Shown here in pieces: positions 6,531-29,940 of a stretch of DNA of 64,000 nt (position 1 is the first letter of the stretch; each line of letters opens with the position of its first letter). The translations under genes and the position numbers were made by a program. The DNA lies in the IMG/VR virus record IMGVR_UViG_3300046092_000062, positions 186,001 to 250,000 of that record. The stretch is one strand, 5' to 3'. The notes beneath the pieces were generated by a model. That model worked only from the letters and a program-made list of their open reading frames with translations, did no database searches and was not told where the DNA came from.

Positions 6531-6727
6531 AACAAGAGCTAACTATGCGCATGGATTGCGAATACACTTACATTCCATTTGCCAATAGCCGCACCAGCAT
6601 CGATTGGATAGAAGCACTACTTTGGTGCGAAGAGTTCGAAGGCATTGGACACTTTAGCATGGGAGGACATGGCATTTACTTCGAAAAGGAAAAAGATGCT
6701 ATAATGTTTACATTAATCAACTCATGA
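6527..6727 (+). CDS. LRW-family mini-protein I-10
   Basis: WCEE core; tail FEKEKDAIMFTLINS. Confidence 0.85.
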   Translation: MKQELTMRMDCEYTYIPFANSRTSIDWIEALLWCEEFEGIGHFSMGGHGIYFEKEKDAIMFTLINS

Positions 6728-7005
6728 AAAAGCAATATACAAGAGACTCCCTTATGAAAAAGGCACGTATTGAATCCGACCAGCTAAACACTATCTTCCA
6801 GAAGTGGGCGGCAAACAATGGGTATAAGACCTCAGGACATTGGATTGATCACCTTGATCGACTTAACCTGCGTTACGGCCCTGGCCAAGCGTTTGATCAT
6901 TATGTTTGGTCATGCGGTGGCCGCATTTACACAGAATACAGCAAGCGTTATGCAGACTTCTTTGAAGACGAAGATTTGATAATGTTTACATTAAGGCACC
7001 TATGA
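6724..7005 (+). CDS. LRW-family mini-protein I-11
   Basis: tail FEDEDLIMFTLRHL. Confidence 0.8.
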   Translation: MKKQYTRDSLMKKARIESDQLNTIFQKWAANNGYKTSGHWIDHLDRLNLRYGPGQAFDHYVWSCGGRIYTEYSKRYADFFEDEDLIMFTLRHL

Positions 7006-7187
7006 TAACAACTTTACGAGCATGGTCCAGAGTTAGTGTAAGAGACATTCAACCAGCAGTAGCATGGTGCAGTGAGAATCTTACCCACAATGATTGGGTG
7101 TGCAGTTCGATCCCAAACGACAACGAATTTAGCTTTCGATTCCGTAACGAAAAGATTGCTACAGAGTTTGCACTGAGATTTGCATGA
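7002..7187 (+). CDS. LRW-family mini-protein I-12
   Basis: WCSENL core; tail FRNEKIATEFALRFA. Confidence 0.85.
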   Translation: MITTLRAWSRVSVRDIQPAVAWCSENLTHNDWVCSSIPNDNEFSFRFRNEKIATEFALRFA

Positions 7188-7429
7188 TACGATTAGATCT
7201 TGTTAAAGACTATGCACCTATTCCGATATGGAACAAATTTGTTGGACACCTGCAAGAACAAGTGGGACCACAGGCAGTAACTGACGCTTATGTTAATACC
7301 GCACTAGCTGAGTACTGTGCAGTGTATTATATGGAAGAGGTGGGTAACATATATGAAAGTTCTGTGCTACACTGGATTGAGTTTGAAGATGAAGAATTGT
7401 ACTCTTGGTTTATGTTGAGGTGGGCATGA
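7184..7429 (+). CDS. LRW-family mini-protein I-13
   Basis: tail FEDEELYSWFMLRWA. Confidence 0.85.
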   Translation: MIRLDLVKDYAPIPIWNKFVGHLQEQVGPQAVTDAYVNTALAEYCAVYYMEEVGNIYESSVLHWIEFEDEELYSWFMLRWA

Positions 7430-7683
7430 TTAGCATATTGTTATCAGACAAGGGCAGTACTCCCGAACAAGCATGGTGGTGGAAGTTTTTACACGGCACG
7501 GATAAACGTAGCGGTCCGTCAACTACAGAAGACCGCATTGAAGCTATCAACTTGGAATTGCTAAATTGGTCAGCGCAGCTATGGCGACACGAGCAAACGG
7601 CTACGCGCCACAATGCCCGAAGCGCATACATTGATTTCTACGACGAACAAGCGTACACTTGGTTTGTGCCGAGGTGGTCATGA
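7426..7683 (+). CDS. LRW-family mini-protein I-14
   Basis: tail FYDEQAYTWFVPRWS (Pro at the conserved Leu). Confidence 0.85.
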   Translation: MISILLSDKGSTPEQAWWWKFLHGTDKRSGPSTTEDRIEAINLELLNWSAQLWRHEQTATRHNARSAYIDFYDEQAYTWFVPRWS

Positions 7684-7874
7684 TTGAAATTAAAATCAGC
7701 AAGAAACTTCGTAATGTATACGGGGAAAGTGGTACTCAGGTTGCTTGGAAATGGTGCTTAGATAACTTTGGCCCACCGGAACCAAACGGTAAGCGTTGGG
7801 CATGGGACACTATGCGCACATTTTGGTTTCATAAAGAAGAAGATGCTACACTGTTTGCACTGAGGTGGTTATGA
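7680..7874 (+). CDS. LRW-family mini-protein I-15
   Basis: WCLDNFGP core; tail FHKEEDATLFALRWL. Confidence 0.85.
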   Translation: MIEIKISKKLRNVYGESGTQVAWKWCLDNFGPPEPNGKRWAWDTMRTFWFHKEEDATLFALRWL

Positions 7875-8098
7875 CAACAATTTCAATGAGCCATAATGTT
7901 CTAACAAATGCAGGGTGGATCCGCATACCGCTTGACGCTGAAAAAGTTATGCAAGCTCGACGACATGAAAGTTATTTTGAATTTTTTGAAACTGCACACA
8001 TTCGCAACCGGTATGCAATCTTTAGTGTGCCCAATGGATACGATTTCTTTTTTCGAAATAAAAAAGATGCTACAGAGTTTGTGTTGAGGTGGGCATGA
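7871..8098 (+). CDS. LRW-family mini-protein I-16
   Basis: tail FRNKKDATEFVLRWA. Confidence 0.85.
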   Translation: MTTISMSHNVLTNAGWIRIPLDAEKVMQARRHESYFEFFETAHIRNRYAIFSVPNGYDFFFRNKKDATEFVLRWA

Positions 8099-8385
8099 CT
8101 AAAGAAGAATGGACGAAATGGAATCGCAAGATACAACTAAACAGCATCTACGGTTTAAATCTCTGTAAAGAAATAGTGGCACCAAGGGATCAAGCACTAA
8201 CAGCGATACAAAACGCATGGGCTCAATGGCACTGTGATATCAAACACAACGTAACAGACTTTGGGTTTAAAGACTGGTGCAAGCGTGAGCATGGGTTTGA
8301 ATACCAACAGAATAGTGACCGGAGTGTTGTCACTACTGTACTTGACGAGCAAAAGTATGCTTGGTTCTTACTAAAGTGGGCATGA
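8095..8385 (+). CDS. LRW-family mini-protein I-17 with N-terminal PolB motif-B-like fragment
   Basis: N-term NRKIQLNSIYG; tail VLDEQKYAWFLLKWA. Confidence 0.85.
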   Translation: MTKEEWTKWNRKIQLNSIYGLNLCKEIVAPRDQALTAIQNAWAQWHCDIKHNVTDFGFKDWCKREHGFEYQQNSDRSVVTTVLDEQKYAWFLLKWA

Positions 8386-8388
8386 AAG

Positions 8389-8598
8389 ATGCAAGTAGAG
8401 AAAATGTTCCATCACACTGTGCCTAGCTCTAATGTGTGCATACAAGCCAGTAAATGGTTGCTGGAAGAGCGTGGATACAAGTTCGTCATTGAAGCCGAAA
8501 CAGAAGGACGCGGCAACAGTTCTAGATACACTGGCAGATACACATTCAAGTTCTTGTGTGAGCAAGAGTATATGTGGTTTCTAATGAGGTGGGCATGA
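8389..8598 (+). CDS. LRW-family mini-protein I-18 (close paralogue of 23627)
   Basis: tail RYTGRYTFKFLCEQEYMWFLMRWA. Confidence 0.85.
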   Translation: MQVEKMFHHTVPSSNVCIQASKWLLEERGYKFVIEAETEGRGNSSRYTGRYTFKFLCEQEYMWFLMRWA

Positions 8599-8599
8599 C

Positions 8600-8779
8600 A
8601 TGTTAACATACCGTATGATTGACTGGGTCAACATTCAACAACGCATGATTGAAGGCGGACTCAGTGATATTCCCAATGGGCGATTTCATGACAGCTACCG
8701 TAAGGACGATTACTTGTACTTTATGGTTGAGTTCGACACACCCGAGGATGAAATGATGTTTTTATTGAGGTGGGCATGA
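8600..8779 (+). CDS. LRW-family mini-protein I-19 (59 aa, missing from ORF track)
   Basis: hand translation MLTYRMIDWVNIQQ...FDTPEDEMMFLLRWA. Confidence 0.8.
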   Translation: MLTYRMIDWVNIQQRMIEGGLSDIPNGRFHDSYRKDDYLYFMVEFDTPEDEMMFLLRWA

Positions 8780-9000
8780 ACTCAAAACAAAGACGACGTG
8801 ATCGCAGAGCATGGAAACACGACATTGTGTTTACACACGAACAAGTTTATGAACGTGGTTACAACGACATGTGGGACTGGTGTGTTACTGTTTTTAATAA
8901 CAGGGGCAACAAGTGGAGAGAGCCGTATGGTCCTCCGGGCGTTAGATGGCAGTTTACCAAGCCAGAATACGCTGTGATGTTTGCACTACGCTGGCAATAA
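8776..9000 (+). CDS. LRW-family mini-protein I-20
   Basis: DWCVTVF core; tail FTKPEYAVMFALRWQ. Confidence 0.85.
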   Translation: MNSKQRRRDRRAWKHDIVFTHEQVYERGYNDMWDWCVTVFNNRGNKWREPYGPPGVRWQFTKPEYAVMFALRWQ

Positions 9001-9421: not shown

Positions 9422-10738
9422 ATGAACAAGCCATGGGACGTAATCGCAGAACTCGAAAGTGACAACAGCCGCCTGTTTAAGGAAGCAGTTATTGCCCGTG
9501 AGAGCAAAGCCGGTAACACAGAAGTGTTTCGGGGTTTTCGTGCTGCATACGATGCAATGGTGACATTCGGTGTTAAGAAAGTTGATGTCAAAACTGGCGA
9601 CGGCCCTGGCATCAGCTCGGGCGCATTTTGGGACATTGCCCGCAAACTTGCAGACCGTGAACTCACAGGTGGTGCTGCTCAAACTGCTATCAACTTCTTG
9701 CGTATGCAAGCAACAGAAGAAGAATGGAACAACTGGTATCGTCGCATCTTGATCAAGGACATGCGTTGCGGTGCTAGCGACAGTATTGTTAACAAGGTTG
9801 CTGATCCCAAATACCATGTGCCAGTTTTTGAATGCCAACTTGCGCACGATGGTGCCAAGCACGAAGGCAAGATCAAAGGTCACAAGACTATCGAAGTCAA
9901 GCTGGATGGTATGCGTGTGCTTACCATTGTTTACCCAACAGGTCAAGTTGATCAATACAGCCGCAATGGTAAAGAGCTGGTTAACTTTGAAGTTGTTAAG
10001 CAACAGATTGCCAAGCACGCCAAGTTCTTTAAAGAGCCAATGGTACTCGACGGTGAGATCATGAGCGCCAGCTTCCAAGACTTGATGAAGCAGGCCAAGC
10101 GCAAGACCAACGTCGACGCAGATGATGCAGTGCTTAACTTGTTTGACATTATCCCACTCGACGAGTTCCAAGCAGGTGTGGGTTCACGTACCCAAGCAGA
10201 ACGCAGCGTGGATCTTTTGGCTTGGTTTACACCTTGCGAAGATCACATGCCCAACGTCACTGTGGTGGGTCAAGAAGATGTGGATCTCGATACCCCAGAA
10301 GGCTACGCACGGTTCAAAGAGATCAATGCACAAGCCATTGCAGCAGGTTACGAAGGCATTATGCTTAAAGAACCCAATGCAGTTTACGAGTGCAAGCGCA
10401 CAGTGAGCTGGCTCAAAATCAAGCCCTTCATTGAAGTGTCACTGACTGCGGTTGCCATTGAAGAAGGTACTGGCAAGAACGTGGGCAAAATGGGTGCAGT
10501 GTTGTTTGAAGGCACAGACGACGGCAAGTTCATCCGCGTAAGCGTTGGTGGCGGCTGGAGCGATAAGGATCGTGCAGACATTTGGGCTGCTCGCAATACA
10601 CCAGAATCTGTTGTAGGCGATGTAGGCGAAGTTCGTGCAGATGCTGCTACGCTGAATCAAGACAGCACAGATGTTTGGAGCTTGCGATTCCCACGTTTTA
10701 AAACATGGCGCGGCTTTGCTAAAGGTGAGAAGCTGTGA
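9422..10738 (+). CDS. lig: ATP-dependent DNA ligase
   Basis: motif I EVKLDG, SRNGK, LDGEI, FDII, EGIMLK, WLKIK, OB-fold end SLRFPRF. Confidence 0.95.
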   Translation: MNKPWDVIAELESDNSRLFKEAVIARESKAGNTEVFRGFRAAYDAMVTFGVKKVDVKTGDGPGISSGAFWDIARKLADRELTGGAAQTAINFLRMQATEEEWNNWYRRILIKDMRCGASDSIVNKVADPKYHVPVFECQLAHDGAKHEGKIKGHKTIEVKLDGMRVLTIVYPTGQVDQYSRNGKELVNFEVVKQQIAKHAKFFKEPMVLDGEIMSASFQDLMKQAKRKTNVDADDAVLNLFDIIPLDEFQAGVGSRTQAERSVDLLAWFTPCEDHMPNVTVVGQEDVDLDTPEGYARFKEINAQAIAAGYEGIMLKEPNAVYECKRTVSWLKIKPFIEVSLTAVAIEEGTGKNVGKMGAVLFEGTDDGKFIRVSVGGGWSDKDRADIWAARNTPESVVGDVGEVRADAATLNQDSTDVWSLRFPRFKTWRGFAKGEKL

Positions 10739-13300: not shown

Positions 13301-13599
13301 GTCTAGAGTACACTTTCGGCCCATTGGGTGACGATGAATTTGCGCTGGGCACCCGTTACAAAGAGATTCAAAAGCTCTTGTGGGAACACCAATGCGAAGT
13401 CACTTTCACTAAAGTAGATGGAAGTGTGCGAACAATGCCCTGCACCCTAAAGGCAGAGGCATTGCCTGCTCGTGATGCTGCAACGCTACACGAGACACGA
13501 TTGCTGAACCACAAGACTCTTAGTGCTTGGTGTTTAGACAAGAGCGAATGGCGCAGTTTTAGAACTGCTAACGTTACTCACATTAAGGTGATCACATGA
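13297..13599 (+). CDS. WYL-like/SH3 beta-barrel protein
   Basis: VTFTKVDGSVRTMPCTL...DKSEWRSFR pattern. Confidence 0.65.
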   Translation: MSLEYTFGPLGDDEFALGTRYKEIQKLLWEHQCEVTFTKVDGSVRTMPCTLKAEALPARDAATLHETRLLNHKTLSAWCLDKSEWRSFRTANVTHIKVIT

Positions 13600-16948: not shown

Positions 16949-16973
16949 CACATAAAGGCATTTAGTGTATAAT
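16945..16973 (+). promoter_or_regulatory. consensus sigma70 promoter heading array II
   Basis: TTGACA-17-TATAAT. Confidence 0.85.
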
Positions 16974-16979
16974 AGTACT

Positions 16980-17162
16980 ATGAACTCTATCACAATCAAT
17001 GGTGCCGATAAGGCACTCGAAGCAGGCGGCTGGTGCAGAAAACAATTTGGTATTAAGGGATGGACAATAGACTTGAACAGTATGTTGGGCAACAATCCCA
17101 CGTATAGGTTTGATTTCTCTAGTCCCGCTGATGCTACACTATTTGCATTAAAATGGCGGTAA
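16980..17162 (+). CDS. LRW-family mini-protein II-1
   Basis: WCRKQFG; tail FSSPADATLFALKWR. Confidence 0.85.
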   Translation: MNSITINGADKALEAGGWCRKQFGIKGWTIDLNSMLGNNPTYRFDFSSPADATLFALKWR

Positions 17163-17410
17163 CTTTAGTCGTTCATGAATTTACACTAGGTGACGTAGAT
17201 GATCCCGAAATCTACGCAGCCGTGCCCTTGTATGAATGGCAATTGAGTGATGCCGGTAAATGGGTTATGGAAAATGCTATTGAAACTCCCCAGTGGGGCA
17301 GAATCAATGATCATCTCACGTACTCACTTCGTTACAGAGTAACTGCAAAGCTCAAAGATGAGGATGCAACCTTTTTCAAGTTAAAGTATGATCACACTAA
17401 CCGACGCTGA
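17153..17410 (+). CDS. LRW-family mini-protein II-2
   Basis: tail LKDEDATFFKLKY. Confidence 0.8.
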   Translation: MAVTLVVHEFTLGDVDDPEIYAAVPLYEWQLSDAGKWVMENAIETPQWGRINDHLTYSLRYRVTAKLKDEDATFFKLKYDHTNRR

Positions 17411-17615
17411 GTGGCGTAATATTAGAAATCAAATCAGAATTGAATACGCCGACAAGCCCAGTGTTTGGCTATTGCGCTCTGTAATGAAGCGTGAGTTAGG
17501 ATTTACTGACCGCCATCATCAAGTATACAGAGAACAAACAGGTTACATCACTACTGTCTACTTGGACTTCTTTAATGATGCAGCAGAAACAATGTTTAGA
17601 TTGAAGTACTTATAA
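17388..17615 (+). CDS. LRW-family mini-protein II-3
   Basis: tail FFNDAAETMFRLKYL. Confidence 0.8.
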   Translation: MITLTDAEWRNIRNQIRIEYADKPSVWLLRSVMKRELGFTDRHHQVYREQTGYITTVYLDFFNDAAETMFRLKYL

Positions 17616-17831
17616 TTGGAATTCATTGCACGTATACTGCCCAAGTTAATTGCTGGTGTCCTAAGCATTATGGATGCCAGTCGCTTGCGGGATAAAGTAT
17701 ACCAGCAACAACACGAGCATGAGTTGATGTGGACTGCACTAGATGATATCGCACGTATGCACCCAGATCATCCGTCAGGAAAAATGGCAAAGAAAACACT
17801 AGATGAAGTTACTACACGCTACGGTAGGTAG
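17616..17831 (+). CDS. hypothetical protein (non-LRW)
   Basis: 71-aa ORF abutting previous stop. Confidence 0.65.
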   Translation: MEFIARILPKLIAGVLSIMDASRLRDKVYQQQHEHELMWTALDDIARMHPDHPSGKMAKKTLDEVTTRYGR

Positions 17832-18219
17832 GTTTCAGGCATGGCGCCATGCACGTTACCTCAAAAAGAAGGGCTGGACCCAGCGCCAGTTTGACCTCAT
17901 CAACGATCCTGATTTTTGCGCACGTGGCAGCAGTATTCGTAAAGATGTCTATCGCGGCTATCCCTACTTAATCTCGTTTGACGACACAGTACCAATGGAA
18001 CGGCGATATGGTCAAGGATGGATCACCGTAGTTGATAATATGACAGCGTGGTGCGAAGCGAATGTTACAGGCAAATGGAGAGAAGATATCCTTGCAGTCG
18101 ACAAGAGTTGGGACGACGAATGGACGCAAGGGTGCATGGGCCTAAGCCACAACATTCTATTCTTTGCATTTAACAATGAGCAAGATGCAGTAATGTTTAG
18201 TCTATACTGGAGTGTGTAA
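17803..18219 (+). CDS. LRW-family protein II-4 with long N-terminal extension
   Basis: AWCEAN core; tail FNNEQDAVMFSLYWSV; start uncertain. Confidence 0.8.
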   Translation: MKLLHATVGRFQAWRHARYLKKKGWTQRQFDLINDPDFCARGSSIRKDVYRGYPYLISFDDTVPMERRYGQGWITVVDNMTAWCEANVTGKWREDILAVDKSWDDEWTQGCMGLSHNILFFAFNNEQDAVMFSLYWSV

Positions 18220-18437
18220 TGAACATCGAATTCAAACATCGCCCGGACCGATACTACGAGTGGGAAATGTACTACAGTCCACAGGGCCCCGAAATGGGCG
18301 AAGTATACGGTTGGTGCTGGGAAACATTCGGTCACCCAGGACTAGCATTAGGTAATGGAACTTGGGATAACCACGGCGGATGGATTAAGTTTCGCAGAGA
18401 AGAAGATATGACTATGTTTATGTTGAGGTGGAGCTAA
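18219..18437 (+). CDS. LRW-family mini-protein II-5
   Basis: WCWETFG; tail FRREEDMTMFMLRWS. Confidence 0.85.
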   Translation: MNIEFKHRPDRYYEWEMYYSPQGPEMGEVYGWCWETFGHPGLALGNGTWDNHGGWIKFRREEDMTMFMLRWS

Positions 18438-18703
18438 TGGAATTATTTTATGGTGGCGGCGGACGCAGTAACCCGGACTTTATACACAAGGTGCGGGTTA
18501 GCAAAAAACGTGCAGGTGATGTTAGTCCACTGATGAAGTGGTGCGACGATTACCCAACTGGTGATAAGGGCTACTTTAAACGCTACTACATCGATTGGCG
18601 TGGTGACACAAAGAGCTGGGATAGTGACTATGTTACATTCCAATTTGAATGGGAACAAGCTGCTATCATGTTTGCTCTAAGTTTTGCGGACAGCGTATGC
18701 TAA
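18437..18703 (+). CDS. LRW-family mini-protein II-6
   Basis: KWCDD; tail FEWEQAAIMFALSF. Confidence 0.8.
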   Translation: MELFYGGGGRSNPDFIHKVRVSKKRAGDVSPLMKWCDDYPTGDKGYFKRYYIDWRGDTKSWDSDYVTFQFEWEQAAIMFALSFADSVC

Positions 18704-19765: not shown

Positions 19766-20032
19766 ATGGACAACGTTATTCACAGCAACAAATATTTCCG
19801 ATTAACTAAATGGCGCCATCGCAAAAGCGACAAGGTGCATTATCGCGTTGAGATGACATACAGTTGGTTGAATCTGGACCAAGAAGCAGGGGAGAAAAGT
19901 TTTCCTGAGCAAGTTCGCGATGTAATCGACCCAACTCGTTGTCGTGCTGGGCAAGCTGGCAACCACTGGAAATACCGTAACTTAGAAGAAGCTACAAAAG
20001 CCTATACATTTTTAGTAATGAAATTCTCATGA
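19766..20032 (+). CDS. LRW-family mini-protein II-8 (divergent)
   Basis: tail YRNLEEATKAYTFLVMKFS. Confidence 0.7.
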   Translation: MDNVIHSNKYFRLTKWRHRKSDKVHYRVEMTYSWLNLDQEAGEKSFPEQVRDVIDPTRCRAGQAGNHWKYRNLEEATKAYTFLVMKFS

Positions 20033-20310
20033 GTTATAAACTTAAACTAGCACACAAGCATCACGATCAATTAGATCAAATTGAAGCATGGCTCAACGCT
20101 AACGTTGGCCCTGGTAGCAAACGACATGCAAACAACACCTGGCTCGGTGCCGAAGATTGGTACTGCTATGAAGAAGCACTAGTTCCGGGCAGCGAGGAAG
20201 AGGAAGAAGAGTATTACGACAACGATGACAATCTTGAAGATATTTCAGATTTGATCTTTGTATTCCGCCGCGAAAGCGATCTGTTAATGTTTAGTTTGAA
20301 ATGGGCATAG
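20029..20310 (+). CDS. LRW-family mini-protein II-9 with acidic insertion
   Basis: SEEEEEEYYDNDDNLED; tail FRRESDLLMFSLKWA; TAG stop. Confidence 0.85.
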   Translation: MSYKLKLAHKHHDQLDQIEAWLNANVGPGSKRHANNTWLGAEDWYCYEEALVPGSEEEEEEYYDNDDNLEDISDLIFVFRRESDLLMFSLKWA

Positions 20311-20311
20311 C

Positions 20312-20668
20312 ATGTCTAGTCCTTTTAAACTCACAGATCTCCCCAACAACACTTGGTCAGTAACATGGACCGAGAATAACTTTGCACATAATGCTAAACA
20401 GCGAGACAAGTTAGTAGATATTCTGTTTAGCGAAATTGGATGCCGCGACGTTGGCCTAGGCATTAAACTAAACAATGGCGAACTAGAAACACTGTGGATT
20501 GGTGAAAAAGAGTATTTTCAACGGTCCGACATAGCCCACGGATGGGAAGACATGTATGTTGTTCGTGGTGTTGTGTTCATTCACGAACACGAAGCTAGGG
20601 AGTTTCATCAATTGATGGAAAGTCGATTGGCTTGGTACTACTTAAAGCAAGGTGCAGCAGTTGCTTGA
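20312..20668 (+). CDS. divergent LRW-like protein II-10
   Basis: FIHEHEAREF followed by a helical extension. Confidence 0.65.
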   Translation: MSSPFKLTDLPNNTWSVTWTENNFAHNAKQRDKLVDILFSEIGCRDVGLGIKLNNGELETLWIGEKEYFQRSDIAHGWEDMYVVRGVVFIHEHEAREFHQLMESRLAWYYLKQGAAVA

Positions 20669-20879
20669 AATTCCATACCCAACCCTAATGAATGGCAGTC
20701 GCACGTTCTCTATGGAAACTCTACAAAAGTGGCTTGACGCACACTTTCCTCAAGAACGTTCCTGCATTGTCCGTGTTGCTATTGTTAACAAAGGGCCTGG
20801 GAGGTACGGCGACGAACGATGGGCGATTCGTTTTTATCGGGATGAAGATGCAACACTGTTTGGATTGTTATGGCAGTAA
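20652..20879 (+). CDS. LRW-family mini-protein II-11
   Basis: tail FYRDEDATLFGLLWQ; start GTG 20652 or ATG 20688. Confidence 0.8.
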   Translation: MQQLLEIPYPTLMNGSRTFSMETLQKWLDAHFPQERSCIVRVAIVNKGPGRYGDERWAIRFYRDEDATLFGLLWQ

Positions 20880-21127
20880 CCTATAAAACTAATCCGGGAT
20901 TCCCAGGTGTTAATTTTCCCGTGTTGCACCGTGTTGTCTATGCACACACCATCGATGGTGTCCCAGCACAATGGCAAATCAGCTACAAGGATTATATAGT
21001 CAATGAATGGCTTAAAGCAAACACACGCCATCCTTACTACCACAGTCCCGGGTATCTTCGTGAAAAGTTCATTGAGTTTGAATGTGATGAAGAAGCAGTG
21101 CTATTCGCACTAAAGTGGGCAAAGTAA
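20870..21127 (+). CDS. LRW-family mini-protein II-12
   Basis: tail FECDEEAVLFALKWAK. Confidence 0.85.
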   Translation: MAVTYKTNPGFPGVNFPVLHRVVYAHTIDGVPAQWQISYKDYIVNEWLKANTRHPYYHSPGYLREKFIEFECDEEAVLFALKWAK

Positions 21128-21357
21128 TGTACAGCAAGACTCACCGATTTTTTAAATTCAAACACGTTCCCAAGGACTTTATATGGGGCAGTGAGGAAAT
21201 TGACCTGTGCCGCCTGCACATTGGTGACAACCGTATCACGATGCCGCTTGTGGACCGCGAATGGTTTAGTTCGCCCGATGGTGTATGGATTCGACATGAT
21301 TGTCTGGATAACGAAATCATAACTTGGTTTGCACTGAAAGCAAGCAATGAAGTTTGA
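21127..21357 (+). CDS. LRW-family mini-protein II-13
   Basis: tail LDNEIITWFALKA. Confidence 0.75.
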   Translation: MYSKTHRFFKFKHVPKDFIWGSEEIDLCRLHIGDNRITMPLVDREWFSSPDGVWIRHDCLDNEIITWFALKASNEV

Positions 21358-21607
21358 ACTGCTAGAAGGGCGCATACACGGAGCCCGTTACTACACAGTT
21401 AGACCAGACTTTAATTGGTGGCTTTCGGGCAGCTTAAACAATACAAATGCCACCTGGCGTGATATGTTAGAATGGTGTGTAGAAGTATTCGGTCCTAGCG
21501 CAGAAATGGGTGTGTGGGAACCCGGTGCTCGTTGGTATGCTAACAATGCAAAGTTTTGGTTTCGTAATGCAGAAGATAGGACAGCGTTTTTGCTGAGATG
21601 GTCATGA
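21347..21607 (+). CDS. LRW-family mini-protein II-14
   Basis: EWCVEVFGP; tail FRNAEDRTAFLLRWS. Confidence 0.85.
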   Translation: MKFELLEGRIHGARYYTVRPDFNWWLSGSLNNTNATWRDMLEWCVEVFGPSAEMGVWEPGARWYANNAKFWFRNAEDRTAFLLRWS

Positions 21608-21837
21608 AACCAGACCTAGTCCAATTTTACTGCGAACGAGATCCCTATTACGCTAAATCACGTGAGTACTACATGATGAACGTAAATCATTACGAAACTC
21701 CTTATTACCTTTGGATGATACAGGAATATCGCACTGTGCTGTTAAACAAACAGGGTAGCTGGAGCGACAGGGCTGAACAGCATTGGGGCTTTATTAATGA
21801 ATCGGATAGAACAATTTTTATGTTGAGATGGTCATGA
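21604..21837 (+). CDS. LRW-family mini-protein II-15
   Basis: tail FINESDRTIFMLRWS. Confidence 0.85.
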   Translation: MKPDLVQFYCERDPYYAKSREYYMMNVNHYETPYYLWMIQEYRTVLLNKQGSWSDRAEQHWGFINESDRTIFMLRWS

Positions 21838-22064
21838 CAACTACTGTTGAATTTGGTAAAGATCGTTATCACTTACAGGGTGAAATGGAAGAATGGTGCG
21901 AGCACAATATTGGGTCTAATCCTCGTTATAGCAACCACGTTTGGTCCAAGCCAGTTGAGTGGGAAGGGTTAGGCACATGGTGCATGGCTAGTGCGTTTGG
22001 CACAACATTTTTCTACTTTAAACATCGCAAAGATGCAACCTTCTTTGCATTGAAATGGAAATAA
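21834..22064 (+). CDS. LRW-family mini-protein II-16
   Basis: EWCEHNIG; tail FKHRKDATFFALKWK. Confidence 0.85.
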   Translation: MTTTVEFGKDRYHLQGEMEEWCEHNIGSNPRYSNHVWSKPVEWEGLGTWCMASAFGTTFFYFKHRKDATFFALKWK

Positions 22065-22065
22065 T

Positions 22066-22428
22066 ATGGATGATCGGAATCTTTGGCACCTGCTATGTGA
22101 TTGGGTAAAATTTGGTAAGTTTATAGAATGGAAAGAATGGTTTTACTGGACCATTGTGCCTGGCACTAGCATTGGGGTCATTTGGCCAAATGGCCCAATT
22201 TCTCTGGGTTGTGATCCTGATGGCGAAGAGGTAATCGTCGACTCCGCTGATCCAAACGATCACTATCGCCCATGGTTAGAAGAGCATGTCGGGCGTCAGG
22301 GCATTGATTGGGAATGGAGAATGGGAACTTTTGGATTTTGGACAGATGAAATAGATACTCTAGACATTAAGTTTCGAGTGGGAAAGACAAAGTATGCTAC
22401 AATAGCAGCATTGATGTGGGGCCAATGA
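22066..22428 (+). CDS. LRW-family protein II-17, extended N-terminus
   Basis: WLEEHVG core; tail KYATIAALMWGQ. Confidence 0.75.
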   Translation: MDDRNLWHLLCDWVKFGKFIEWKEWFYWTIVPGTSIGVIWPNGPISLGCDPDGEEVIVDSADPNDHYRPWLEEHVGRQGIDWEWRMGTFGFWTDEIDTLDIKFRVGKTKYATIAALMWGQ

Positions 22429-22628
22429 GAACCAAAACTACAAGAGAACTATATCCGTACCATGTGCGCTTTAAGCGTACAGGAGATTGGTATGGCAATG
22501 ATGGTACTTGGTATCAAATTAGCACATGGCTTCGAGAACACTTTGGGCAGAATTGGGAATATCTTGACAGTATGTTTATGTTCTCTAAGGAAGAACACAA
22601 AATGCTTTTTATAATGAGATGGCTATGA
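22425..22628 (+). CDS. LRW-family mini-protein II-18
   Basis: WLREHFG; tail FSKEEHKMLFIMRWL. Confidence 0.85.
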   Translation: MRTKTTRELYPYHVRFKRTGDWYGNDGTWYQISTWLREHFGQNWEYLDSMFMFSKEEHKMLFIMRWL

Positions 22629-23044
22629 CAAAACGCAACACCGTAGTAATGGATATCGAAACCACAACAGCAGTAATGCCGCGTGGGTCTTCTTCTGTTT
22701 TTCAGGGCATCACAGGTGGAATACATCCTGGAGAAATGATGATTTATGCCGGGGGCAGACAAACTGGCAAGTCCACACTGTCTTACCATATATTAAAGAG
22801 CAGATACTACGAAATGGGCATCAAGGAACAAATCCAGACGTTGGATACGTTTACACTAGATGGTGCTACATGGTACACTGTACACTGTCGTCCTTCGACT
22901 ATTAGTGGGTGGGTGCAAGAGCAAGACTCCGATATGTGGTGCCGACACTACAACACAGGCGCACTGCGAGTTGAATACCCCACGTTTAACAACTACAACA
23001 TACACGAAGAACTGTATTCAATGTTATTGTTGAAATGGTCATGA
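22625..23044 (+). CDS. LRW-family protein II-19 with DnaB-like Walker A fragment
   Basis: GGIHPGEMMIYAGGRQTGKST; tail IHEELYSMLLLKWS. Confidence 0.8.
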   Translation: MTKRNTVVMDIETTTAVMPRGSSSVFQGITGGIHPGEMMIYAGGRQTGKSTLSYHILKSRYYEMGIKEQIQTLDTFTLDGATWYTVHCRPSTISGWVQEQDSDMWCRHYNTGALRVEYPTFNNYNIHEELYSMLLLKWS

Positions 23045-23406
23045 AAATCTTAAAACAAACTGTAGCAGCTAAGACTTGCACCCTCAAAGCCAATTGGACT
23101 ATTGATCGCTCAGCAGACAATAGCTTTACGATCGGTGATGATACGTGGCAAGAGGTTGGGGCAGCACTACGAAAAGAGATTGATGAAGAAATTGTTAACA
23201 ATATTAGAAGGCATGAGCTTATGTTAAAAGGATGGGTCAAGGCCCCGTTTACTAGCGACAAGTTTGCTACACCAGGCAACCACCAGATAGCAGAAGTTAC
23301 TGCATGGATTCACATGAACACCACGGCGCAATATCAAATCTTCGGCCGAGAGTTCTGGTTCTCAAGCAAGGAAGACTTAACACTGTTTGTACTGAGGTGG
23401 GCATGA
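23041..23406 (+). CDS. LRW-family protein II-20 with major-capsid (gp23-like) fragment
   Basis: ILKQTVAAKT..LKANWT...AAL.KEIDEEIV; tail FSSKEDLTLFVLRWA. Confidence 0.8.
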   Translation: MKILKQTVAAKTCTLKANWTIDRSADNSFTIGDDTWQEVGAALRKEIDEEIVNNIRRHELMLKGWVKAPFTSDKFATPGNHQIAEVTAWIHMNTTAQYQIFGREFWFSSKEDLTLFVLRWA

Positions 23407-23630
23407 GCTATACACTGTACCCCGACGAAGACATTCTAAAGAAGCAACGATATATCGTTAAGTACAGAGGGAGCCTGTATGGGCACCGCGACGAGATGCT
23501 TGCCTGGTGTGTAGAACAGTTTGGTCCACATTCACATGCCTACAAAAATCCACGATGGAGTGAAAACTGGGACCGATTCTGCTTTAAGAATGAAAGCGAC
23601 ATGATGCTGTTTATGTTGAGATGGTCATGA
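23403..23630 (+). CDS. LRW-family mini-protein II-21
   Basis: WCVEQFGP; tail FKNESDMMLFMLRWS. Confidence 0.85.
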   Translation: MSYTLYPDEDILKKQRYIVKYRGSLYGHRDEMLAWCVEQFGPHSHAYKNPRWSENWDRFCFKNESDMMLFMLRWS

Positions 23631-23893
23631 CAGATACAGATAAATTAGAGTGGTCAGATATTTGCCGCCATGAGCATAAGTGCAAGGGTGATGAATTGTT
23701 ATATCACACTGTGCCTAGCTATAGTGTATATGTCAGGGCATCTAAATGGTTGCGGGAAGAGCGTGGGTACAAGTTTATCAGCGTAGAGGGTGAAACGGAA
23801 GAACATAGTGCTGGTTGGCGTTACACGGGTAGGTATACTTTTAAGTTCTTGTGCGAGCAAGAGTATATGTGGTTTAAGTTGAGGTGGTCGTGA
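23627..23893 (+). CDS. LRW-family mini-protein II-22 (close paralogue of 8389)
   Basis: tail RYTGRYTFKFLCEQEYMWFKLRWS. Confidence 0.85.
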   Translation: MTDTDKLEWSDICRHEHKCKGDELLYHTVPSYSVYVRASKWLREERGYKFISVEGETEEHSAGWRYTGRYTFKFLCEQEYMWFKLRWS

Positions 23894-24180
23894 TGAGTAG
23901 ACCAGGTTTTAATTCACAAGAGTGGTTTCGGGCCAAGCATGACCCAAAACATGATATGGTACATGGCGATAGACTGTATTACGTTGAGCCAGGTTGCGAA
24001 TACGGGTTCAAAGAAGATGACGGATATGTGTGGAATCGCATAAGCTGTAGCTATTGGTTCGGGGACTGGATTGAAGAAAATGGCGGTGAGGGACGTTGGC
24101 GAGCATACGGCGGCAGGCATCGTGCTATCTACATTGTGCGCGAAGACCTACTAGCGTTTATTAAGTTAAAGTGGCTATGA
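23893..24180 (+). CDS. LRW-family mini-protein II-23
   Basis: DWIEENG; tail VREDLLAFIKLKWL. Confidence 0.8.
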   Translation: MSRPGFNSQEWFRAKHDPKHDMVHGDRLYYVEPGCEYGFKEDDGYVWNRISCSYWFGDWIEENGGEGRWRAYGGRHRAIYIVREDLLAFIKLKWL

Positions 24181-24377
24181 AATACTGGAACAAAGACAAA
24201 CGTGTTCGGCAAAACCATTGGTATACAATTACTTCGCCTACATGGTGGTCGTATGCTGATACTAAACTAGAGTTGCAGAGATTTGACAGTCCGGGTAAGT
24301 TTTATCTATATTACGGCAGTAGAACAATTTGGTTTGAGCGTGAACAAGACGCAGTATTTTTTAGATTGAAGATGTGA
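24177..24377 (+). CDS. LRW-family mini-protein II-24
   Basis: tail FEREQDAVFFRLKM. Confidence 0.8.
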   Translation: MKYWNKDKRVRQNHWYTITSPTWWSYADTKLELQRFDSPGKFYLYYGSRTIWFEREQDAVFFRLKM

Positions 24378-24378
24378 T

Positions 24379-24570
24379 ATGAAGCAATATGGCCTAGCGA
24401 TTGAACGTTGGGGGCATCCACGTAAGGCAACTATATGGCATTGGCTTAAACAAAACTTTGGCCCCGAGGGTGATCGTTGGGGCACACAGTATGACTACGG
24501 ACTGGACAATCTCTGGATGAATGAAGATGTTTACATCATGTATAAATTAAAATGGGAACAACATGACTGA
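24379..24570 (+). CDS. LRW-family mini-protein II-25
   Basis: WLKQNFGP; tail MNEDVYIMYKLKW. Confidence 0.8.
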   Translation: MKQYGLAIERWGHPRKATIWHWLKQNFGPEGDRWGTQYDYGLDNLWMNEDVYIMYKLKWEQHD

Positions 24571-24961
24571 TAAGAATACCTCAGATCAAATGAAAATCTT
24601 GATCCCAATGATCCGTAAGGTCATGCCCACAATGATCGCAACTGACATCATTGGTGTGCAGACAATGGATATGGGAATCGAACTTGAAACCGGGGAGACT
24701 TACGTGGATGAAGCCGCTAGTCATGCAACCGAAAACAACATCGTGGAATGGTATTGGGCACGATTGCCCCTGTCTGCAGGAGCATTCTGGAACATCAAAG
24801 GAACCCAGGCGCATTACAAACAAGTTGATGCATGGTGTGAAGAAACATTCGGACCACGCTGCTCCAACGAGCATCCTGAATTTATATGGGATAAAATTAA
24901 CTACCGTTATTGCTTTAAACATTCCGAAGATAGGACAGCATTCGTGCTGAAGTGGGGCTAA
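24563..24961 (+). CDS. LRW-family protein II-26 with major-capsid Gol-region fragment
   Basis: ILIPMIRKVMPTMIATDIIGVQTM; WCEETFGP; tail FKHSEDRTAFVLKWG. Confidence 0.85.
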   Translation: MTDKNTSDQMKILIPMIRKVMPTMIATDIIGVQTMDMGIELETGETYVDEAASHATENNIVEWYWARLPLSAGAFWNIKGTQAHYKQVDAWCEETFGPRCSNEHPEFIWDKINYRYCFKHSEDRTAFVLKWG

Positions 24962-24998
24962 TATTTCACGCTACGTACTGCCAACACAGTCCGAGCAA

Positions 24999-25175
24999 AT
25001 GGACGCATGGTTCAATGGCGGGCACTTAATTGTGCTAACAGACATTATGTATTGGAGCGCTCACTACCAAGACTTAGCAGACTGGTGTAAAGGAAACGAT
25101 TCCCAAGTGCAAGGAATGACAGTGGTAGTACCCAATGAAAAAGTATTAACTTTATTCTGCCTACGCTGGTCGTAA
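24999..25175 (+). CDS. LRW-family mini-protein II-27 (58 aa, missing from track)
   Basis: hand translation MDAWFNGG...ADWCKG...VPNEKVLTLFCLRWS. Confidence 0.75.
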   Translation: MDAWFNGGHLIVLTDIMYWSAHYQDLADWCKGNDSQVQGMTVVVPNEKVLTLFCLRWS

Positions 25176-25185
25176 TAAGTACAGT

Positions 25186-26394
25186 ATGATCCACCCATTC
25201 TCCGACAAAAATAAGTTCGGATACTACACAATCGGTCAGTATACCACTTACTCAAAGCTAGAAGCATTTGAGATTTCTTCAAAGACTCAACAACCTATTA
25301 GTAGATATTTCAATGATGAAGTCTACACCGCTGCTAATCCGTTAAACGAGCCTCCGTTATCACTGTGGGAATACTACACCCAACGAGCTCAACAGATTCG
25401 CAACAGTTATGATTATGTAGTTGTTATGTACAGCGGCGGAGCAGATAGCAAAACTGTGCTTGACTCATTTGTTAAAAACAACATTCATGTAGATGAGATT
25501 GCTCAGTTTACACATGCAGAGGGTTCGGGCAAAAACGCATTCATGGATAGAGAAGTTTGGAAAGTGGCAGCGCCAACTACTCAAGCAATCGTTGACAACA
25601 ACCCACTCACTAAGCATAGACTCATTGATGTATCTAAGCATTACTACTCGCAGTTTGATGACGCAAACTTTAAATTTGACTTTATCTACCAAGTAAACAA
25701 TTTCCTGCACCCACTTGCTAGTATCCGATGCAGATTAAGAGAATATGTCGACGATTGGAAACATATCATCGATTCTGGAAAAAGATTATGTTTAGTGTGG
25801 GGAGGTGAAAAGCCATTGGTATTTTACAGCGGTATACACAAAAAGCACGTTTTTATGTTTTCTGACTGTATTGATAATATGGTACCACCGTCTGTTCAGC
25901 AAGAGAATAACCCCGGATGGTTTGATGAGTTGTTTTACTGGACTCCGGACATGCCCGAGATTGCAATTAAACAGGCGCACGTTGTAAAAAACTGTTTTAG
26001 GGATCCTACTAATTCTCTTGGTTACTTAGAAAGGACCAAGGCACCGTCAGCATCAGCATTTGAACAAATTGTAAATGAAGATGCCAATCGACGCAGTGGT
26101 TCGACTGTTATCAATGGCGTTAGGTGGTTTTTGAAACGCGAAGCGTTGCATCAATTGATATACCCTACATGGAATCCGTACACGTTTTCAGACGGAAAAC
26201 CCCCGTCTATTATTACACATCCACGTGACCAATGGTTCTGGAACGACACTAGTGCATTAAATACTGCACGGACTAACTATATGCAGGGCATTGTAAAGTT
26301 TAAACAAATGGTTCCAGTTTCTGCACTAAAAGACCCAACTAATTTTGAAACTGGTTTGAAATTTATTAATACTAAAATGTACCCTGTAGAATAA
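25186..26394 (+). CDS. PP-loop (adenine nucleotide alpha-hydrolase) family protein
   Basis: VVMYSGGADS PP-loop; 402 aa; TAAGTA at 25176. Confidence 0.7.
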   Translation: MIHPFSDKNKFGYYTIGQYTTYSKLEAFEISSKTQQPISRYFNDEVYTAANPLNEPPLSLWEYYTQRAQQIRNSYDYVVVMYSGGADSKTVLDSFVKNNIHVDEIAQFTHAEGSGKNAFMDREVWKVAAPTTQAIVDNNPLTKHRLIDVSKHYYSQFDDANFKFDFIYQVNNFLHPLASIRCRLREYVDDWKHIIDSGKRLCLVWGGEKPLVFYSGIHKKHVFMFSDCIDNMVPPSVQQENNPGWFDELFYWTPDMPEIAIKQAHVVKNCFRDPTNSLGYLERTKAPSASAFEQIVNEDANRRSGSTVINGVRWFLKREALHQLIYPTWNPYTFSDGKPPSIITHPRDQWFWNDTSALNTARTNYMQGIVKFKQMVPVSALKDPTNFETGLKFINTKMYPVE

Positions 26395-26397
26395 TAG

Positions 26398-26426
26398 TTG
26401 CGCTAAATGGCATCATATGCTATAAT
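26398..26426 (+). promoter_or_regulatory. sigma70-type promoter
   Basis: TTGCGC-17-TATAAT with extended TG. Confidence 0.7.
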
Positions 26427-26431
26427 ACAGT

Positions 26432-26647
26432 ATGGAAAAGAAAATCAAATGGCTACACGAAGGTACACTACTTCGTGCCACTGTGCCCGTTGCACCACGT
26501 GGATTTGAAAGATCCCTTCGCGAAGAAGACATGGATCCAATCCAAGAATGGTGTGACGAAGTTGGGTACGGACGCCGCATGAGCTTTGACACGTTTAAAT
26601 TTAAAACACAGGCAGAGATAACTGCATTTCTACTAAAATGGTCTTAA
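26432..26647 (+). CDS. LRW-family mini-protein II-28
   Basis: EWCDE; tail FKTQAEITAFLLKWS. Confidence 0.85.
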   Translation: MEKKIKWLHEGTLLRATVPVAPRGFERSLREEDMDPIQEWCDEVGYGRRMSFDTFKFKTQAEITAFLLKWS

Positions 26648-26910
26648 TCGACAATGACATCAGCAGCATGTACCCAGGCAGCGTTGAAAACCCAAGAAGC
26701 AGAGTATTTTGGGCACAAATTGATGAGGAACATCGCATGAGAGTACTAAACAAGAAGTATTGGCCGTATCATGTTAAAGCCGAGACAACCGATAAACAAG
26801 AGCGCTGGTGCTATGAGAATCTCAAAAGTAGCGAATGGCGTAATGTTGGCAGTTACTTTGCATTCAAGCGAGAGCAAGATGCAATGATGTTTACACTAAA
26901 GTGGTCCTAA
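26638..26910 (+). CDS. LRW-family mini-protein II-29
   Basis: N-term DISSMYP; RWCYENL; tail FKREQDAMMFTLKWS. Confidence 0.85.
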   Translation: MVLIDNDISSMYPGSVENPRSRVFWAQIDEEHRMRVLNKKYWPYHVKAETTDKQERWCYENLKSSEWRNVGSYFAFKREQDAMMFTLKWS

Positions 26911-29175: not shown

Positions 29176-29397
29176 ATGGCAAAATCAGACGACATTATTC
29201 GCATGGCTGGCAAAGTAGAAGAAGTTCTACCCAACGCTATGTTTAGAATTGTGCTTGAAAACAAGCATACCATTACCGCAACTATTGGCGGTAGACTACG
29301 CAAAAACAATATTCGCATCTTGCTCGGCGATAGCGTAGAAATTGAAATGAGCCCATACGATATGGATCGCGGGCGTGTAGTGTATCGCAATAAATAA
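29176..29397 (+). CDS. infA: translation initiation factor IF-1
   Basis: [18 protein letters not shown]...[33 protein letters not shown]. Confidence 0.95.
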
Positions 29398-29940
29398 GTG
29401 ATGCACTCCATACGTAACACCCTAACACTATTAGAATCCCCAACCGAATTAGCGCAGATTAAACTGCCATACAGCCGCACTGCACTCTCACCAGTTATGA
29501 GTAGTGCAACAGTTGATAGTCATTACGGAAAACTATACAAGGGCTACGTAGATCGCTATAACAAAGGCGAAGGCGACAAAACCTTCAACGAAGCAGGTGC
29601 TTACTTACACGGCATATTCTTTGGTCAATTTAGAGCACCACGTTCTACTGCACCCAAAGGACACATATTAGATCTAATCAATCGCCACCACACATCATTT
29701 GTGGATTTTAAAAAGAATTTCAAAGAAGAAGCGTTAAAGATGCAAGGCTCTGGTTGGATTTATCTAAGCAAGAGCGGGGCAATTAAGACCATTGGTAATC
29801 ACGCTAAACGCACAGATATAGCATTGCTAGTTGATATGTGGGAACATGCTTACACAAACGACTACAGCACAAACAAAGCAAAGTATCTGGACAGCATCTG
29901 GCGCATAATGGACTGGGACGCAATTAACAGACGTTTGTGA
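29398..29940 (+). CDS. sod: Fe/Mn superoxide dismutase
   Basis: HYGK, LHGIFF, GSGW and DMWEHAY; all four metal ligands appear present. Confidence 0.88.
   Translation: MMHSIRNTLTLLESPTELAQIKLPYSRTALSPVMSSATVDSHYGKLYKGYVDRYNKGEGDKTFNEAGAYLHGIFFGQFRAPRSTAPKGHILDLINRHHTSFVDFKKNFKEEALKMQGSGWIYLSKSGAIKTIGNHAKRTDIALLVDMWEHAYTNDYSTNKAKYLDSIWRIMDWDAINRRL

What the first reader, a model, noticed from the sequence alone, without database searches (positions are those of the whole stretch)
23041..23406. Second, different major-capsid fragment fused to an LRW module
Seen: KILKQTVAAKTCTLKANWT...AALRKEIDEEIVNNIRR precedes a standard EVTAWI...FVLRWA module. Established (recalled): gp23-type capsid proteins carry I.KQ.V.AK.R.L.A.WT.E..QD...L..EI..EI over the P-domain and spine helix. 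Two independent captures from the same gene, 1.5 kb apart, argue against chance. Inference: could poison capsid assembly of competing phages or titrate capsid sensors.
Basis: partly seen in the sequence, partly recalled or inferred. Interest (0 to 1): 0.82.

Follow-up and report, generated by a model that had tools for sequence, protein, structure and literature searches.

The report
Capsid-protein fragment fused to phage module
A freshwater jumbo phage carries a small, conserved gene whose front end is an old, heavily diverged copy of about 58 residues from the middle of a major capsid protein, joined to a widespread but undescribed small phage domain; what it does is unknown, and a role as a mimic of unassembled capsid protein is a testable idea, not a result.

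Summary
ORF 23041-23406 (+; alternative ATG at 23035) has two parts:
- **N-terminal ~58 residues:** homologous to the basic P-domain strand plus spine helix of gp23-type capsid proteins. Support: Pfam Gp23 E=7e-5, PHROG major head E=2e-4, tblastn hits only inside capsid genes, hhalign 97.5% probability (equivalent to T4 gp23 residues 254-315).
- **C-terminal part:** one of about 45 "LRW" modules found in this window.

The gene and the second capsid-fragment fusion (24563-24961) occur together in five related metagenomic loci, and both are under purifying selection. They are therefore old, maintained genes, not debris.

The LRW module is a large, unnamed, phage-only family: 4224 cluster representatives, no Pfam or PHROG model, and a confident predicted fold with no PDB analogue. 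Other LRW subfamilies also carry capsid-like N-termini. The array changes by whole-gene gain and loss at conserved overlapping junctions.

The donor was a PA5oct/Phosso-type capsid protein, the phage's own broad clade. I could not retrieve the phage's own capsid gene.

Function is not shown. I favour mimicry of unassembled capsid protein aimed at a host factor (about 0.3). A capsid-unrelated structural helix is about equally likely. Capsid poisoning is possible but unsupported.

The parts
23041..23406 (+). Chimeric gene (121 aa from the ATGA-coupled start at 23041; 123 aa from the in-frame ATG at 23035, the numbering used in this report)
   Evidence: ORF list and sequence. An identical protein, P0001, is on contig Ga0456271_000003. 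Orthologues are 67-83% identical.
23044..23106 (+). aa 4-24: derived from the basic P-domain beta-strand of the capsid protein (capsid consensus ILKETVEAKTRRLSARWTFE)
   Evidence: Alignment A2 and hhalign. AF2 gives low confidence or coil here. This part is lost or scrambled in orthologues L099 and L101.
23107..23136 (+). aa 25-34: degenerate remnant of the short acidic P-domain helix; variable, with a 5-6 residue deletion in three orthologues (L006, L100, L101)
   Evidence: Alignments A1 and A2. The role of this element in T4 gp23 is taken from PMC9546572.
23137..23226 (+). aa 35-64: long helix; aa 35-59 derive from the capsid spine helix (EIDxE(I/L)xN motif kept)
   Evidence: AF2 helix 35-64, pLDDT 86-94; A2 and hhalign. 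Invariant in all six orthologues: W38 E40 L45 I49 D50 E52 I53 V54 N55 I57 R59.
23227..23274 (+). aa 65-80: linker (GWVKAPFTSDKF...) that takes the place of the second strand of the first hairpin seen in typical family members
   Evidence: AF2 beta-bridge at residues 68-69 compared with the typical-member model, strands 3-10 and 13-20. Nearly invariant in orthologues.
23275..23403 (+). aa 81-123: LRW module (helix, beta-hairpin, helix; ends FVLRWA)
   Evidence: Family HMM E=4e-14. AF2 elements H82-95, E100-103, E106-109, H112-122. dN/dS about 0.05-0.12 in most pairs.
23041..23044 (+). ATGA overlap of this gene's start with the upstream LRW gene's stop (translational coupling and conserved recombination junction)
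   Evidence: Sequence. 24 of 36 family genes end in an ATGA or GTGA overlap; TGGTCATGA and TGGGCATGA each occur 7 times in the window against about 0.24 expected.
24563..24961 (+). Companion fusion: aa 5-38 (nt 24575-24676) derive from the most conserved N-arm block of the capsid protein (LIPxIRKVMPxxIAxDIxGVQ), joined to an LRW module
   Evidence: Pfam Gp23 27.2 bits, above the gathering score; phrog_138; tblastn hits only in capsid genes; aligns to T4 gp23 98-118. Found together with the target's orthologue in L006, L098, L099 and L101.
19981..25175 (+). The LRW gene array that holds both fusions (about 22 members). Further arrays lie at 4376-9000, 16956-18703 and 26426-26910.
   Evidence: Motif scan and HMM search of all ORFs.

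Best explanation
**What it is (well supported, about 0.9).** This is an old chimeric accessory gene of a freshwater PA5oct-related jumbo myovirus. An internal piece of about 58 residues from a PA5oct/Phosso-type gp23-like capsid protein became the N-terminus of one member of a very large family of small phage proteins, the LRW domain family (full form: hairpin, helix, hairpin, helix). The piece comprises the basic P-domain strand, a remnant of the short acidic helix, and the spine helix. It replaces the first strand of the domain. The gene sits in an array of translationally coupled cassettes. These cassettes are gained, lost and probably recombined at their conserved '...LRW(S/A)-stop/ATG' junctions.

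**How it most likely works (inferred, about 0.3).** The LRW domain would act as a stable carrier. It would present a peptide that imitates an element of free, unassembled capsid protein. The protein would then engage a factor that normally recognises nascent capsid protein, most plausibly a host factor (an immune sensor, a chaperone, or a translation-factor-type partner), so that the factor is occupied or blunted.

The neighbouring fusion would do the same with the N-arm block. In T4, that block is reported to bind EF-Tu and to trigger the Lit protease.
For: **Homology of aa 1-59 to capsid proteins:**

**Donor type:** the orthologue profile scores 34-44 bits on PA5oct-like, Phosso and Vibrio 2.275.O capsid proteins, against 22.7 bits on T4 and 24.8 on RaK2. 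The phage itself is PA5oct-related (clamp loader 57% identical).

**Maintained, not debris:**
- Orthologues at 67-83% identity.
- Both fusions occur together in L006, L098, L099 and L101.
- dN/dS for the capsid-like part is mostly about 0.3-0.5, and about 0.05-0.12 for the LRW part in most pairs. For the companion's capsid-like part it is mostly 0.05-0.25.
- An ESM Atlas cluster of 113 members has the same architecture.

**Helix retained:** AF2 helix 35-64, with invariant polar residues D50, E52, N55 and R59.

**Recurrence:** capsid-like N-termini also occur on other LRW subfamilies elsewhere. P0176, P0228, P0282 and P0311 carry N-arm-type pieces; P0136 carries a spine-helix-type piece.

**Cassette dynamics:** junction statistics; gene-precise deletions in relatives (23389->23614, 24175->24378); differing gene content in L006.

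**Background:** capsid proteins are common triggers of bacterial defence, including the Gol peptide of gp23 (PMC9712102; PMC3014915).
Against: - No experiment or co-fold was done; the partner is unknown.
- Orthologues L099 and L101 have lost or scrambled the strand part, so only the helix is needed.
- Positions identical to the capsid consensus are not more conserved among orthologues than other positions (7 of 22 versus 8 of 40, p=0.23).
- The fragment is only about 35-43% identical to any capsid protein, while these capsid proteins are 71-100% identical to one another. A precise mimic surface may therefore no longer exist.
- Ascertainment bias: only captures from highly conserved proteins can be recognised at all, so the apparent preference for capsid motifs may be overstated.
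- Expression is not shown. There is only a relative's contig in an RNA library, which can contain DNA.
Confidence: 0.4

Rival explanations
1. Exaptation with no capsid-related role. A stray capsid-gene piece supplied an amphipathic helix that now serves only as a structural or oligomerisation element, replacing the first strand of the LRW domain. The protein does whatever other LRW proteins do.
For: - Only the helix is kept in all orthologues; the strand part is dispensable.
- Capsid-identical positions are not preferentially conserved.
- The linker and LRW part are far more constrained than the capsid-like part.
- AF2 places the helix confidently next to the module.
- Heavy divergence from all capsid proteins.
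Against: - Capsid-derived N-termini recur on several LRW subfamilies, and a second one is conserved beside this gene. That is more than one accident would give.
- Invariant polar residues on the helix (D50, E52, N55, R59) suggest a binding face rather than mere packing.
Confidence: 0.3
2. Capsid-assembly interference or regulation. The basic strand and spine-helix mimic would dock on capsid protein, or on its scaffold, of a co-infecting related phage or of the phage itself, and so disturb or time assembly.
For: - In T4 gp23 the equivalent region carries the basic strand and acidic short helix that make inter-capsomer contacts. It also carries head-length mutations (268, 275, 285, 287) and gp31-bypass sites in the spine helix (292, 306, 307) (PMC9546572).
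- The strand part keeps or gains basic residues and is predicted disordered on its own, as expected for a strand that pairs on binding.
Against: - The strand is lost in two orthologues and the acidic helix is degenerate.
- Capsid proteins of this clade are nearly invariant in this region, so a poison would also hit the phage's own capsid.
- No evidence on timing or binding.
Confidence: 0.12
3. Chance resemblance, or a decaying pseudogene fragment that is not a functional protein.
For: The single-sequence Pfam score is just under the gathering threshold (22.8 versus 24.4 bits).
Against: - Four independent searches agree, and all hits are capsid genes.
- Intact orthologues at saturating synonymous divergence, with dN/dS below 1.
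- Conserved gene order in relatives.
Confidence: 0.02

Closest known systems
gp23-type major capsid protein (Pfam PF07068; T4 gp23, PA5oct major head protein)
   Same: Residues 1-59 are homologous to the P-domain strand and spine helix (T4 gp23 254-315; PA5oct capsid protein about 150-211).
   Different: Only about 15% of the capsid protein is present, with no N-arm, E-loop, A domain or P-loop. It is 35-43% identical, whereas the real capsid proteins of this clade are 71% or more identical to one another. It cannot form an HK97 fold.
Gol peptide of T4 gp23 (binds EF-Tu, trigger of the Lit protease)
   Same: A short capsid-protein peptide acting by itself on a host factor. The companion ORF 24563-24961 carries the homologous block (aligns to T4 gp23 98-118). 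That block is described as the most conserved gp23 region (PMC3014915).
   Different: Gol is part of the capsid protein, not a separate gene. The target ORF carries a different region (254-315), for which no host partner is known. The exact Gol residue range (93-122) is from my memory, not from a tool.
Partial duplications of phage structural genes, such as T4 alt.-1 and alt.-2
   Same: Small ORFs made from a duplicated piece of a virion-protein gene. The T4 record's own note calls alt.-1/alt.-2 an old duplication of the first part of alt.
   Different: Those lie next to their parent gene and are not fused to another domain. Here the piece is internal, fused in frame to an unrelated module, lies outside the 64-kb window that lacks the capsid gene, and is conserved across divergent phages.
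Satellite-encoded capsid redirectors (SaPI CpmB, P4 Sid) (from general knowledge, not tested)
   Same: Small proteins that act on a capsid protein's assembly interfaces. This is the analogue of the 'poison' reading.
   Different: They are not derived from capsid proteins, they are encoded by satellites, and no homology was seen here.

Membership tests
Major capsid protein Gp23 (PF07068) | Whole-protein score at or above Pfam's gathering threshold (24.4 bits) | tested here: not met
   22.8 bits, E=7e-5. The companion ORF reaches 27.2 bits, but over only 27 profile positions.
Major capsid protein Gp23 (PF07068) | Coverage of the full HK97-type fold (N-arm, E-loop, P domain, A domain; about 376 profile positions) | tested here: not met
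   Only profile positions 134-190 are matched. The AF2 model has one long helix plus the LRW module.
Major capsid protein Gp23 (PF07068) | Homology, meaning common descent of the matched segment | tested here: met
   hhalign probability 97.5%, E=7e-12; tblastn hits only in capsid genes; phrog_138.
LRW small-protein family (undescribed; defined here) | C-terminal helix / beta-hairpin / helix with W..(C)..W..F.F..E.D...F.L(R/K)W at the very C-terminus | tested here: met
   HMM E=4e-14; AF2 elements H82-95, E100-103, E106-109, H112-122; ends in RWA.
LRW small-protein family (undescribed; defined here) | Full domain including the N-terminal beta-hairpin (typical member: strands 3-10 and 13-20) | tested here: not met
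   In the target the first strand is replaced by the capsid-derived helix; only a beta-bridge at 68-69 remains.
LRW small-protein family (undescribed; defined here) | Location in same-strand arrays with overlapping stop and start codons | tested here: met
   ATGA overlap at 23041-23044 and again at 23403-23406.
Phage anti-defence decoys or mimics | Binds or blocks a host immune sensor, or its trigger site | not testable with these tools
   No partner identified. I did not scan the PADLOC defence-protein library, which holds defence rather than anti-defence proteins. This remains a lead only.
Gol-type EF-Tu-binding peptide (companion ORF only) | Homology to the conserved gp23 block reported as Gol | tested here: inconclusive
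   Aligns to T4 gp23 98-118. The review calls Gol the most conserved gp23 region in the first quarter of the protein. Exact Gol residues were not verified with a tool, and EF-Tu binding is untested.

The most novel reading that the evidence does not exclude
The LRW arrays may be a display system. A small, stable, fast-shuffling phage domain would present short conserved peptides taken from the phage's own essential proteins: the capsid N-arm (Gol-type) block, the capsid spine helix, and possibly others. Early in infection these proteins would then act as decoys or antagonists for host factors that recognise those peptides, such as Lit-like or other capsid-sensing defences. This would be a new class of anti-defence protein, made from the trigger itself.
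Probability: 0.15. Interest if true: 0.85.

Novelty: new variant of a known kind. Interest (0 to 1): 0.62.

Why it matters
Capsid proteins are among the commonest triggers of bacterial anti-phage systems. No phage-encoded capsid-fragment protein turned up in the few papers and reviews I searched. Here such genes are conserved, recur on several branches of a very large unnamed phage protein family, and come in a pair that covers two different capsid elements.

Even if the decoy idea fails, three results stand:
- A phage-only domain family of thousands of clusters with no Pfam, PHROG or PDB counterpart.
- A cassette-like way in which these arrays change.
- A clear case of an essential structural gene donating pieces to accessory genes.

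Tried and rejected
**The phage's own capsid gene.** I could not retrieve it.
- Two protein-guided scans of IMG/VR and one degenerate DNA-pattern scan (checked) returned other contigs but never IMGVR_UViG_3300046092_000062 or its close relatives.
- The 120 listed capsid homologues include none from a 320,767-bp contig.
- Walking along the contig would have needed more look-ups than allowed.

**DNA similarity.** Searches of the region against deposited phages found nothing, in both near and distant modes.

**Structure searches.**
- Target model: no PDB match (best E=0.34). In BFVD it matched only uncharacterised proteins of uncultured phages.
- Confident typical-member model: no PDB match (best E=1.3).

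**The LRW module in deposited phages.** tblastn with a typical LRW member found nothing. Pfam and PHROG scans of 41 and 150 family members gave no family for the module.

**Other possible donors.**
- The P-loop-like N-terminus of ORF 22619-23044 and its look-alikes could not be assigned to a donor (tblastn none; PDB profile E of 0.13 or worse).
- No family N-terminus matched a large ORF of this window, apart from one weak 20-residue match to the DNA ligase.

**Other tests.**
- Whether capsid-identical positions are preferentially conserved: not significant.
- Promoter and terminator scan: counts no higher than in shuffled sequence.
- Literature searches for a described family or a capsid-decoy precedent found none.

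Full report
**Where the window comes from.** The target protein is found letter for letter on JGI metagenome contig 3300046092 Ga0456271_000003 (320,767 bp). This is also IMG/VR UViG_3300046092_000062, and the window is roughly bases 186,001-250,000 of it. The window encodes a NAMPT-type enzyme, an ATP-dependent DNA ligase, a clamp loader and a ClpB-like ATPase. The clamp loader is most similar to that of Pseudomonas jumbo phage PA5oct (57%), then Phosso and Atu_ph07. No deposited phage matches the DNA. The region is present in at least 20 freshwater metagenome samples.

**The observation.** Four independent tests tie its first ~58 residues to gp23-type capsid proteins:
- Pfam PF07068: E=7e-5, 22.8 bits, profile positions 134-190 of 376, just below the gathering score.
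- PHROG 138, major head protein: E=2e-4.
- tblastn against 50,697 phage records: all 13 hits lie inside capsid genes, of the PA5oct group, Phosso and Vibrio phage 2.275.O.
- hhalign of six orthologous N-termini against nine capsid proteins: probability 97.5%, E=7e-12, target aa 5-60 aligned to T4 gp23 254-315.

In the alignment, 22 of 62 positions equal the capsid consensus. [quoted passage not shown] Residues 268-287 lie by the short acidic P-domain helix. That helix, together with a basic P-domain strand, makes inter-capsomer contacts.

**Structure.** AF2 was run with 41 family sequences (pLDDT 81). It gives an unstructured or low-confidence aa 1-34, a long helix at 35-64, then helix 82-95, hairpin 100-109 and helix 112-122.

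A typical family member (21347-21604), run with 134 sequences, gives a confident model (pLDDT 89, pTM 0.80). Its order is hairpin, helix, hairpin, helix. In the target, the capsid-derived helix stands where the first strand would be.

Neither model has a PDB analogue. The only structural neighbours are uncharacterised proteins of uncultured phages.

**The family.** About 45 ORFs in the window carry the module. All are on the + strand, in four clusters. A profile of 36 modules finds 4224 cluster representatives at E of 0.001 or better among 1.84 billion. Most are 55-90 residues long and end in RWS, RWA or KWS. Every named hit is "hypothetical"; hits come from metagenomes, with longest contigs ranging from under 1 kb to 374 kb, several of them above 150 kb. 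No Pfam or PHROG model covers the module, and a typical member finds nothing in deposited phages.

Twenty-four of 36 family genes overlap the next start codon as ATGA or GTGA. The nine-base junctions TGGTCATGA and TGGGCATGA each occur seven times, against about 0.24 expected. The final S or A of "LRWS/LRWA" is thus partly dictated by the next gene's start codon.

Relatives differ by whole genes. L006 lacks 23403-23630 and the 402-aa ORF, and has three extra members. Metagenome contigs show gene-precise deletions at 23389->23614 and 24175->24378.

**Conservation.** Five orthologues (67-83% identical) were found. In L006, L098, L099 and L101 the orthologue of the second fusion lies 1.5-1.8 kb downstream, as it does here. 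The L100 contig is too short to show this. An ESM Atlas cluster of 113 viral members has the same architecture.

Pairwise dN/dS values (ranges describe most pairs):

| Gene | Segment | dN/dS |
|---|---|---|
| Target | capsid-like part | about 0.3-0.5 (full range 0.17-0.52) |
| Target | linker | about 0.1-0.9, on low dS |
| Target | LRW part | about 0.05-0.12 (a few pairs up to 0.28) |
| Companion | capsid-like part | about 0.05-0.25 (one pair 0.37) |

For the companion gene, the window-L006 pair has almost no synonymous change and is uninformative.

Two orthologues (L099, L101) have lost or scrambled the strand part but keep the helix. Positions W38, E40, L45, I49, D50, E52, I53, V54, N55, I57 and R59 are invariant. 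Positions that equal the capsid consensus are not significantly more conserved than the others (p=0.23).

**Donor.** The orthologue profile scores 34-44 bits on PA5oct-like, Phosso and Vibrio 2.275.O capsid proteins, but 22.7 bits on T4 and 24.8 on RaK2. The donor was therefore of the phage's own broad clade. Capsid proteins in this clade are 71-100% identical to one another, while the fragment is about 35-43% identical to them. The capture is thus old and has since evolved under different constraints. I could not retrieve the phage's own capsid gene.

**A wider pattern.** Among 191 family representatives from elsewhere:
- Four carry N-termini like the capsid N-arm block (P0176, P0228, P0282, P0311).
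- One carries a spine-helix-like stretch (P0136).

Two of these are confirmed by Pfam Gp23. They sit on different LRW subfamilies. The cause is either repeated capture or N-terminal exchange between cassettes.

The companion ORF's block aligns to T4 gp23 98-118. A review describes the Gol peptide as the most conserved gp23 region and as an EF-Tu binder that triggers Lit (PMC3014915). Capsid proteins are frequent defence triggers (PMC9712102).

One caution applies. Only pieces of highly conserved proteins are recognisable after long divergence, so the apparent enrichment is biased upward.

**Interpretation.**
- *Shown:* the chimeric origin, the conservation, the family and its cassette dynamics.
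- *Inferred:* function. I favour presentation of a capsid-derived peptide as a mimic aimed at a host factor (about 0.3). This rests on the recurrence of capsid pieces, the paired conservation and the invariant polar helix face.
- *Rivals:* a purely structural helix is about as likely (0.3). Assembly interference is possible (0.12), but the loss of the strand in two orthologues and the near-invariance of clade capsid proteins in this region weigh against it. Chance or a pseudogene is essentially excluded.

**Expression.** Not demonstrated. A 1165-nt contig from a relative spans the gene in an RNA library, but such libraries can contain DNA.

Noticed in passing
window 4376-9000, 16956-18703, 19981-25175, 26426-26910 (+): About 45 paralogous small genes share the C-terminal LRW module. 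The family has 4224 cluster representatives in public data, no Pfam or PHROG model, and a confident predicted fold with no PDB analogue.
   Followed up: yes
window 24563-24961 (+): Second capsid-fragment fusion. Its aa 5-38 are homologous to the most conserved N-arm block of gp23-type capsid proteins (T4 gp23 98-118), probably the Gol / EF-Tu-binding region. It is strongly conserved in relatives (dN/dS mostly 0.05-0.25).
   Followed up: partly
window 22619-23044 (+); also P0133, P0158, P0192: The LRW gene just upstream has a Walker-A-like N-terminus (GG.(K/H)PGE...GKS) shared with unrelated family members elsewhere. No donor protein could be identified (weak UvsX/DnaB/AAA hits only).
   Followed up: partly
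window 23389-23614 and 24175-24378; L006 6333-7304: Whole-cassette gain and loss between close relatives, with break points in the conserved LRW 3' ends and start overlaps. Some database members (P0127, P0177, P0195, P0211, P0253) hold two or more modules in one polypeptide.
   Followed up: partly
window 1515-1589 (+): A tRNA with anticodon CUA (amber suppressor type; ARAGORN labels it Pyl) lies just after the NAMPT gene. TAG ends only 12 of 198 plus-strand ORFs of 60 aa or more, and no plus-strand gene in the window is visibly split by TAG. Late genes elsewhere in the genome may read TAG as sense.
   Followed up: partly
window 25186-26394 (+): A 402-aa ORF with an SGGxDS (PP-loop-like) motif interrupts the LRW array here but is absent from the same place in relative L006. 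It has no Pfam family.
   Followed up: no
window 59-1462 (+): NAMPT-type nicotinamide phosphoribosyltransferase (Pfam 1.8e-55). Phage NAD+ salvage enzymes have been linked to countering NAD-depleting defences; a paper on this appears in the reference list seen.
   Followed up: no
window 8095-8385 versus 9422-10738: The first 20 residues of this LRW member weakly resemble residues 110-129 of the DNA ligase encoded 1 kb downstream (40% identity, E=0.008 in a small database). This may be chance.
   Followed up: partly
window 13324-13599, 29176-29397, 29497-29940, 51662-52654, 58527-60818: Other cargo: a WYL_2-like ORF, an eIF-1a-like small ORF, a Fe/Mn superoxide dismutase C-terminal domain (these three from precomputed Pfam hits), a TctC-like binding protein and a ClpB-like double AAA+ ATPase.
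   Followed up: no
L003 3360-4937; L104 8562-9233; L105 2643-3102: In PA5oct, T4 and RaK2 the major capsid gene is immediately followed by an annotated endonuclease gene: a Hef-like homing endonuclease in PA5oct, the homing endonuclease segD in T4, and an 'endonuclease' in RaK2. This might promote copying of capsid-gene pieces, but that is untested.
   Followed up: no
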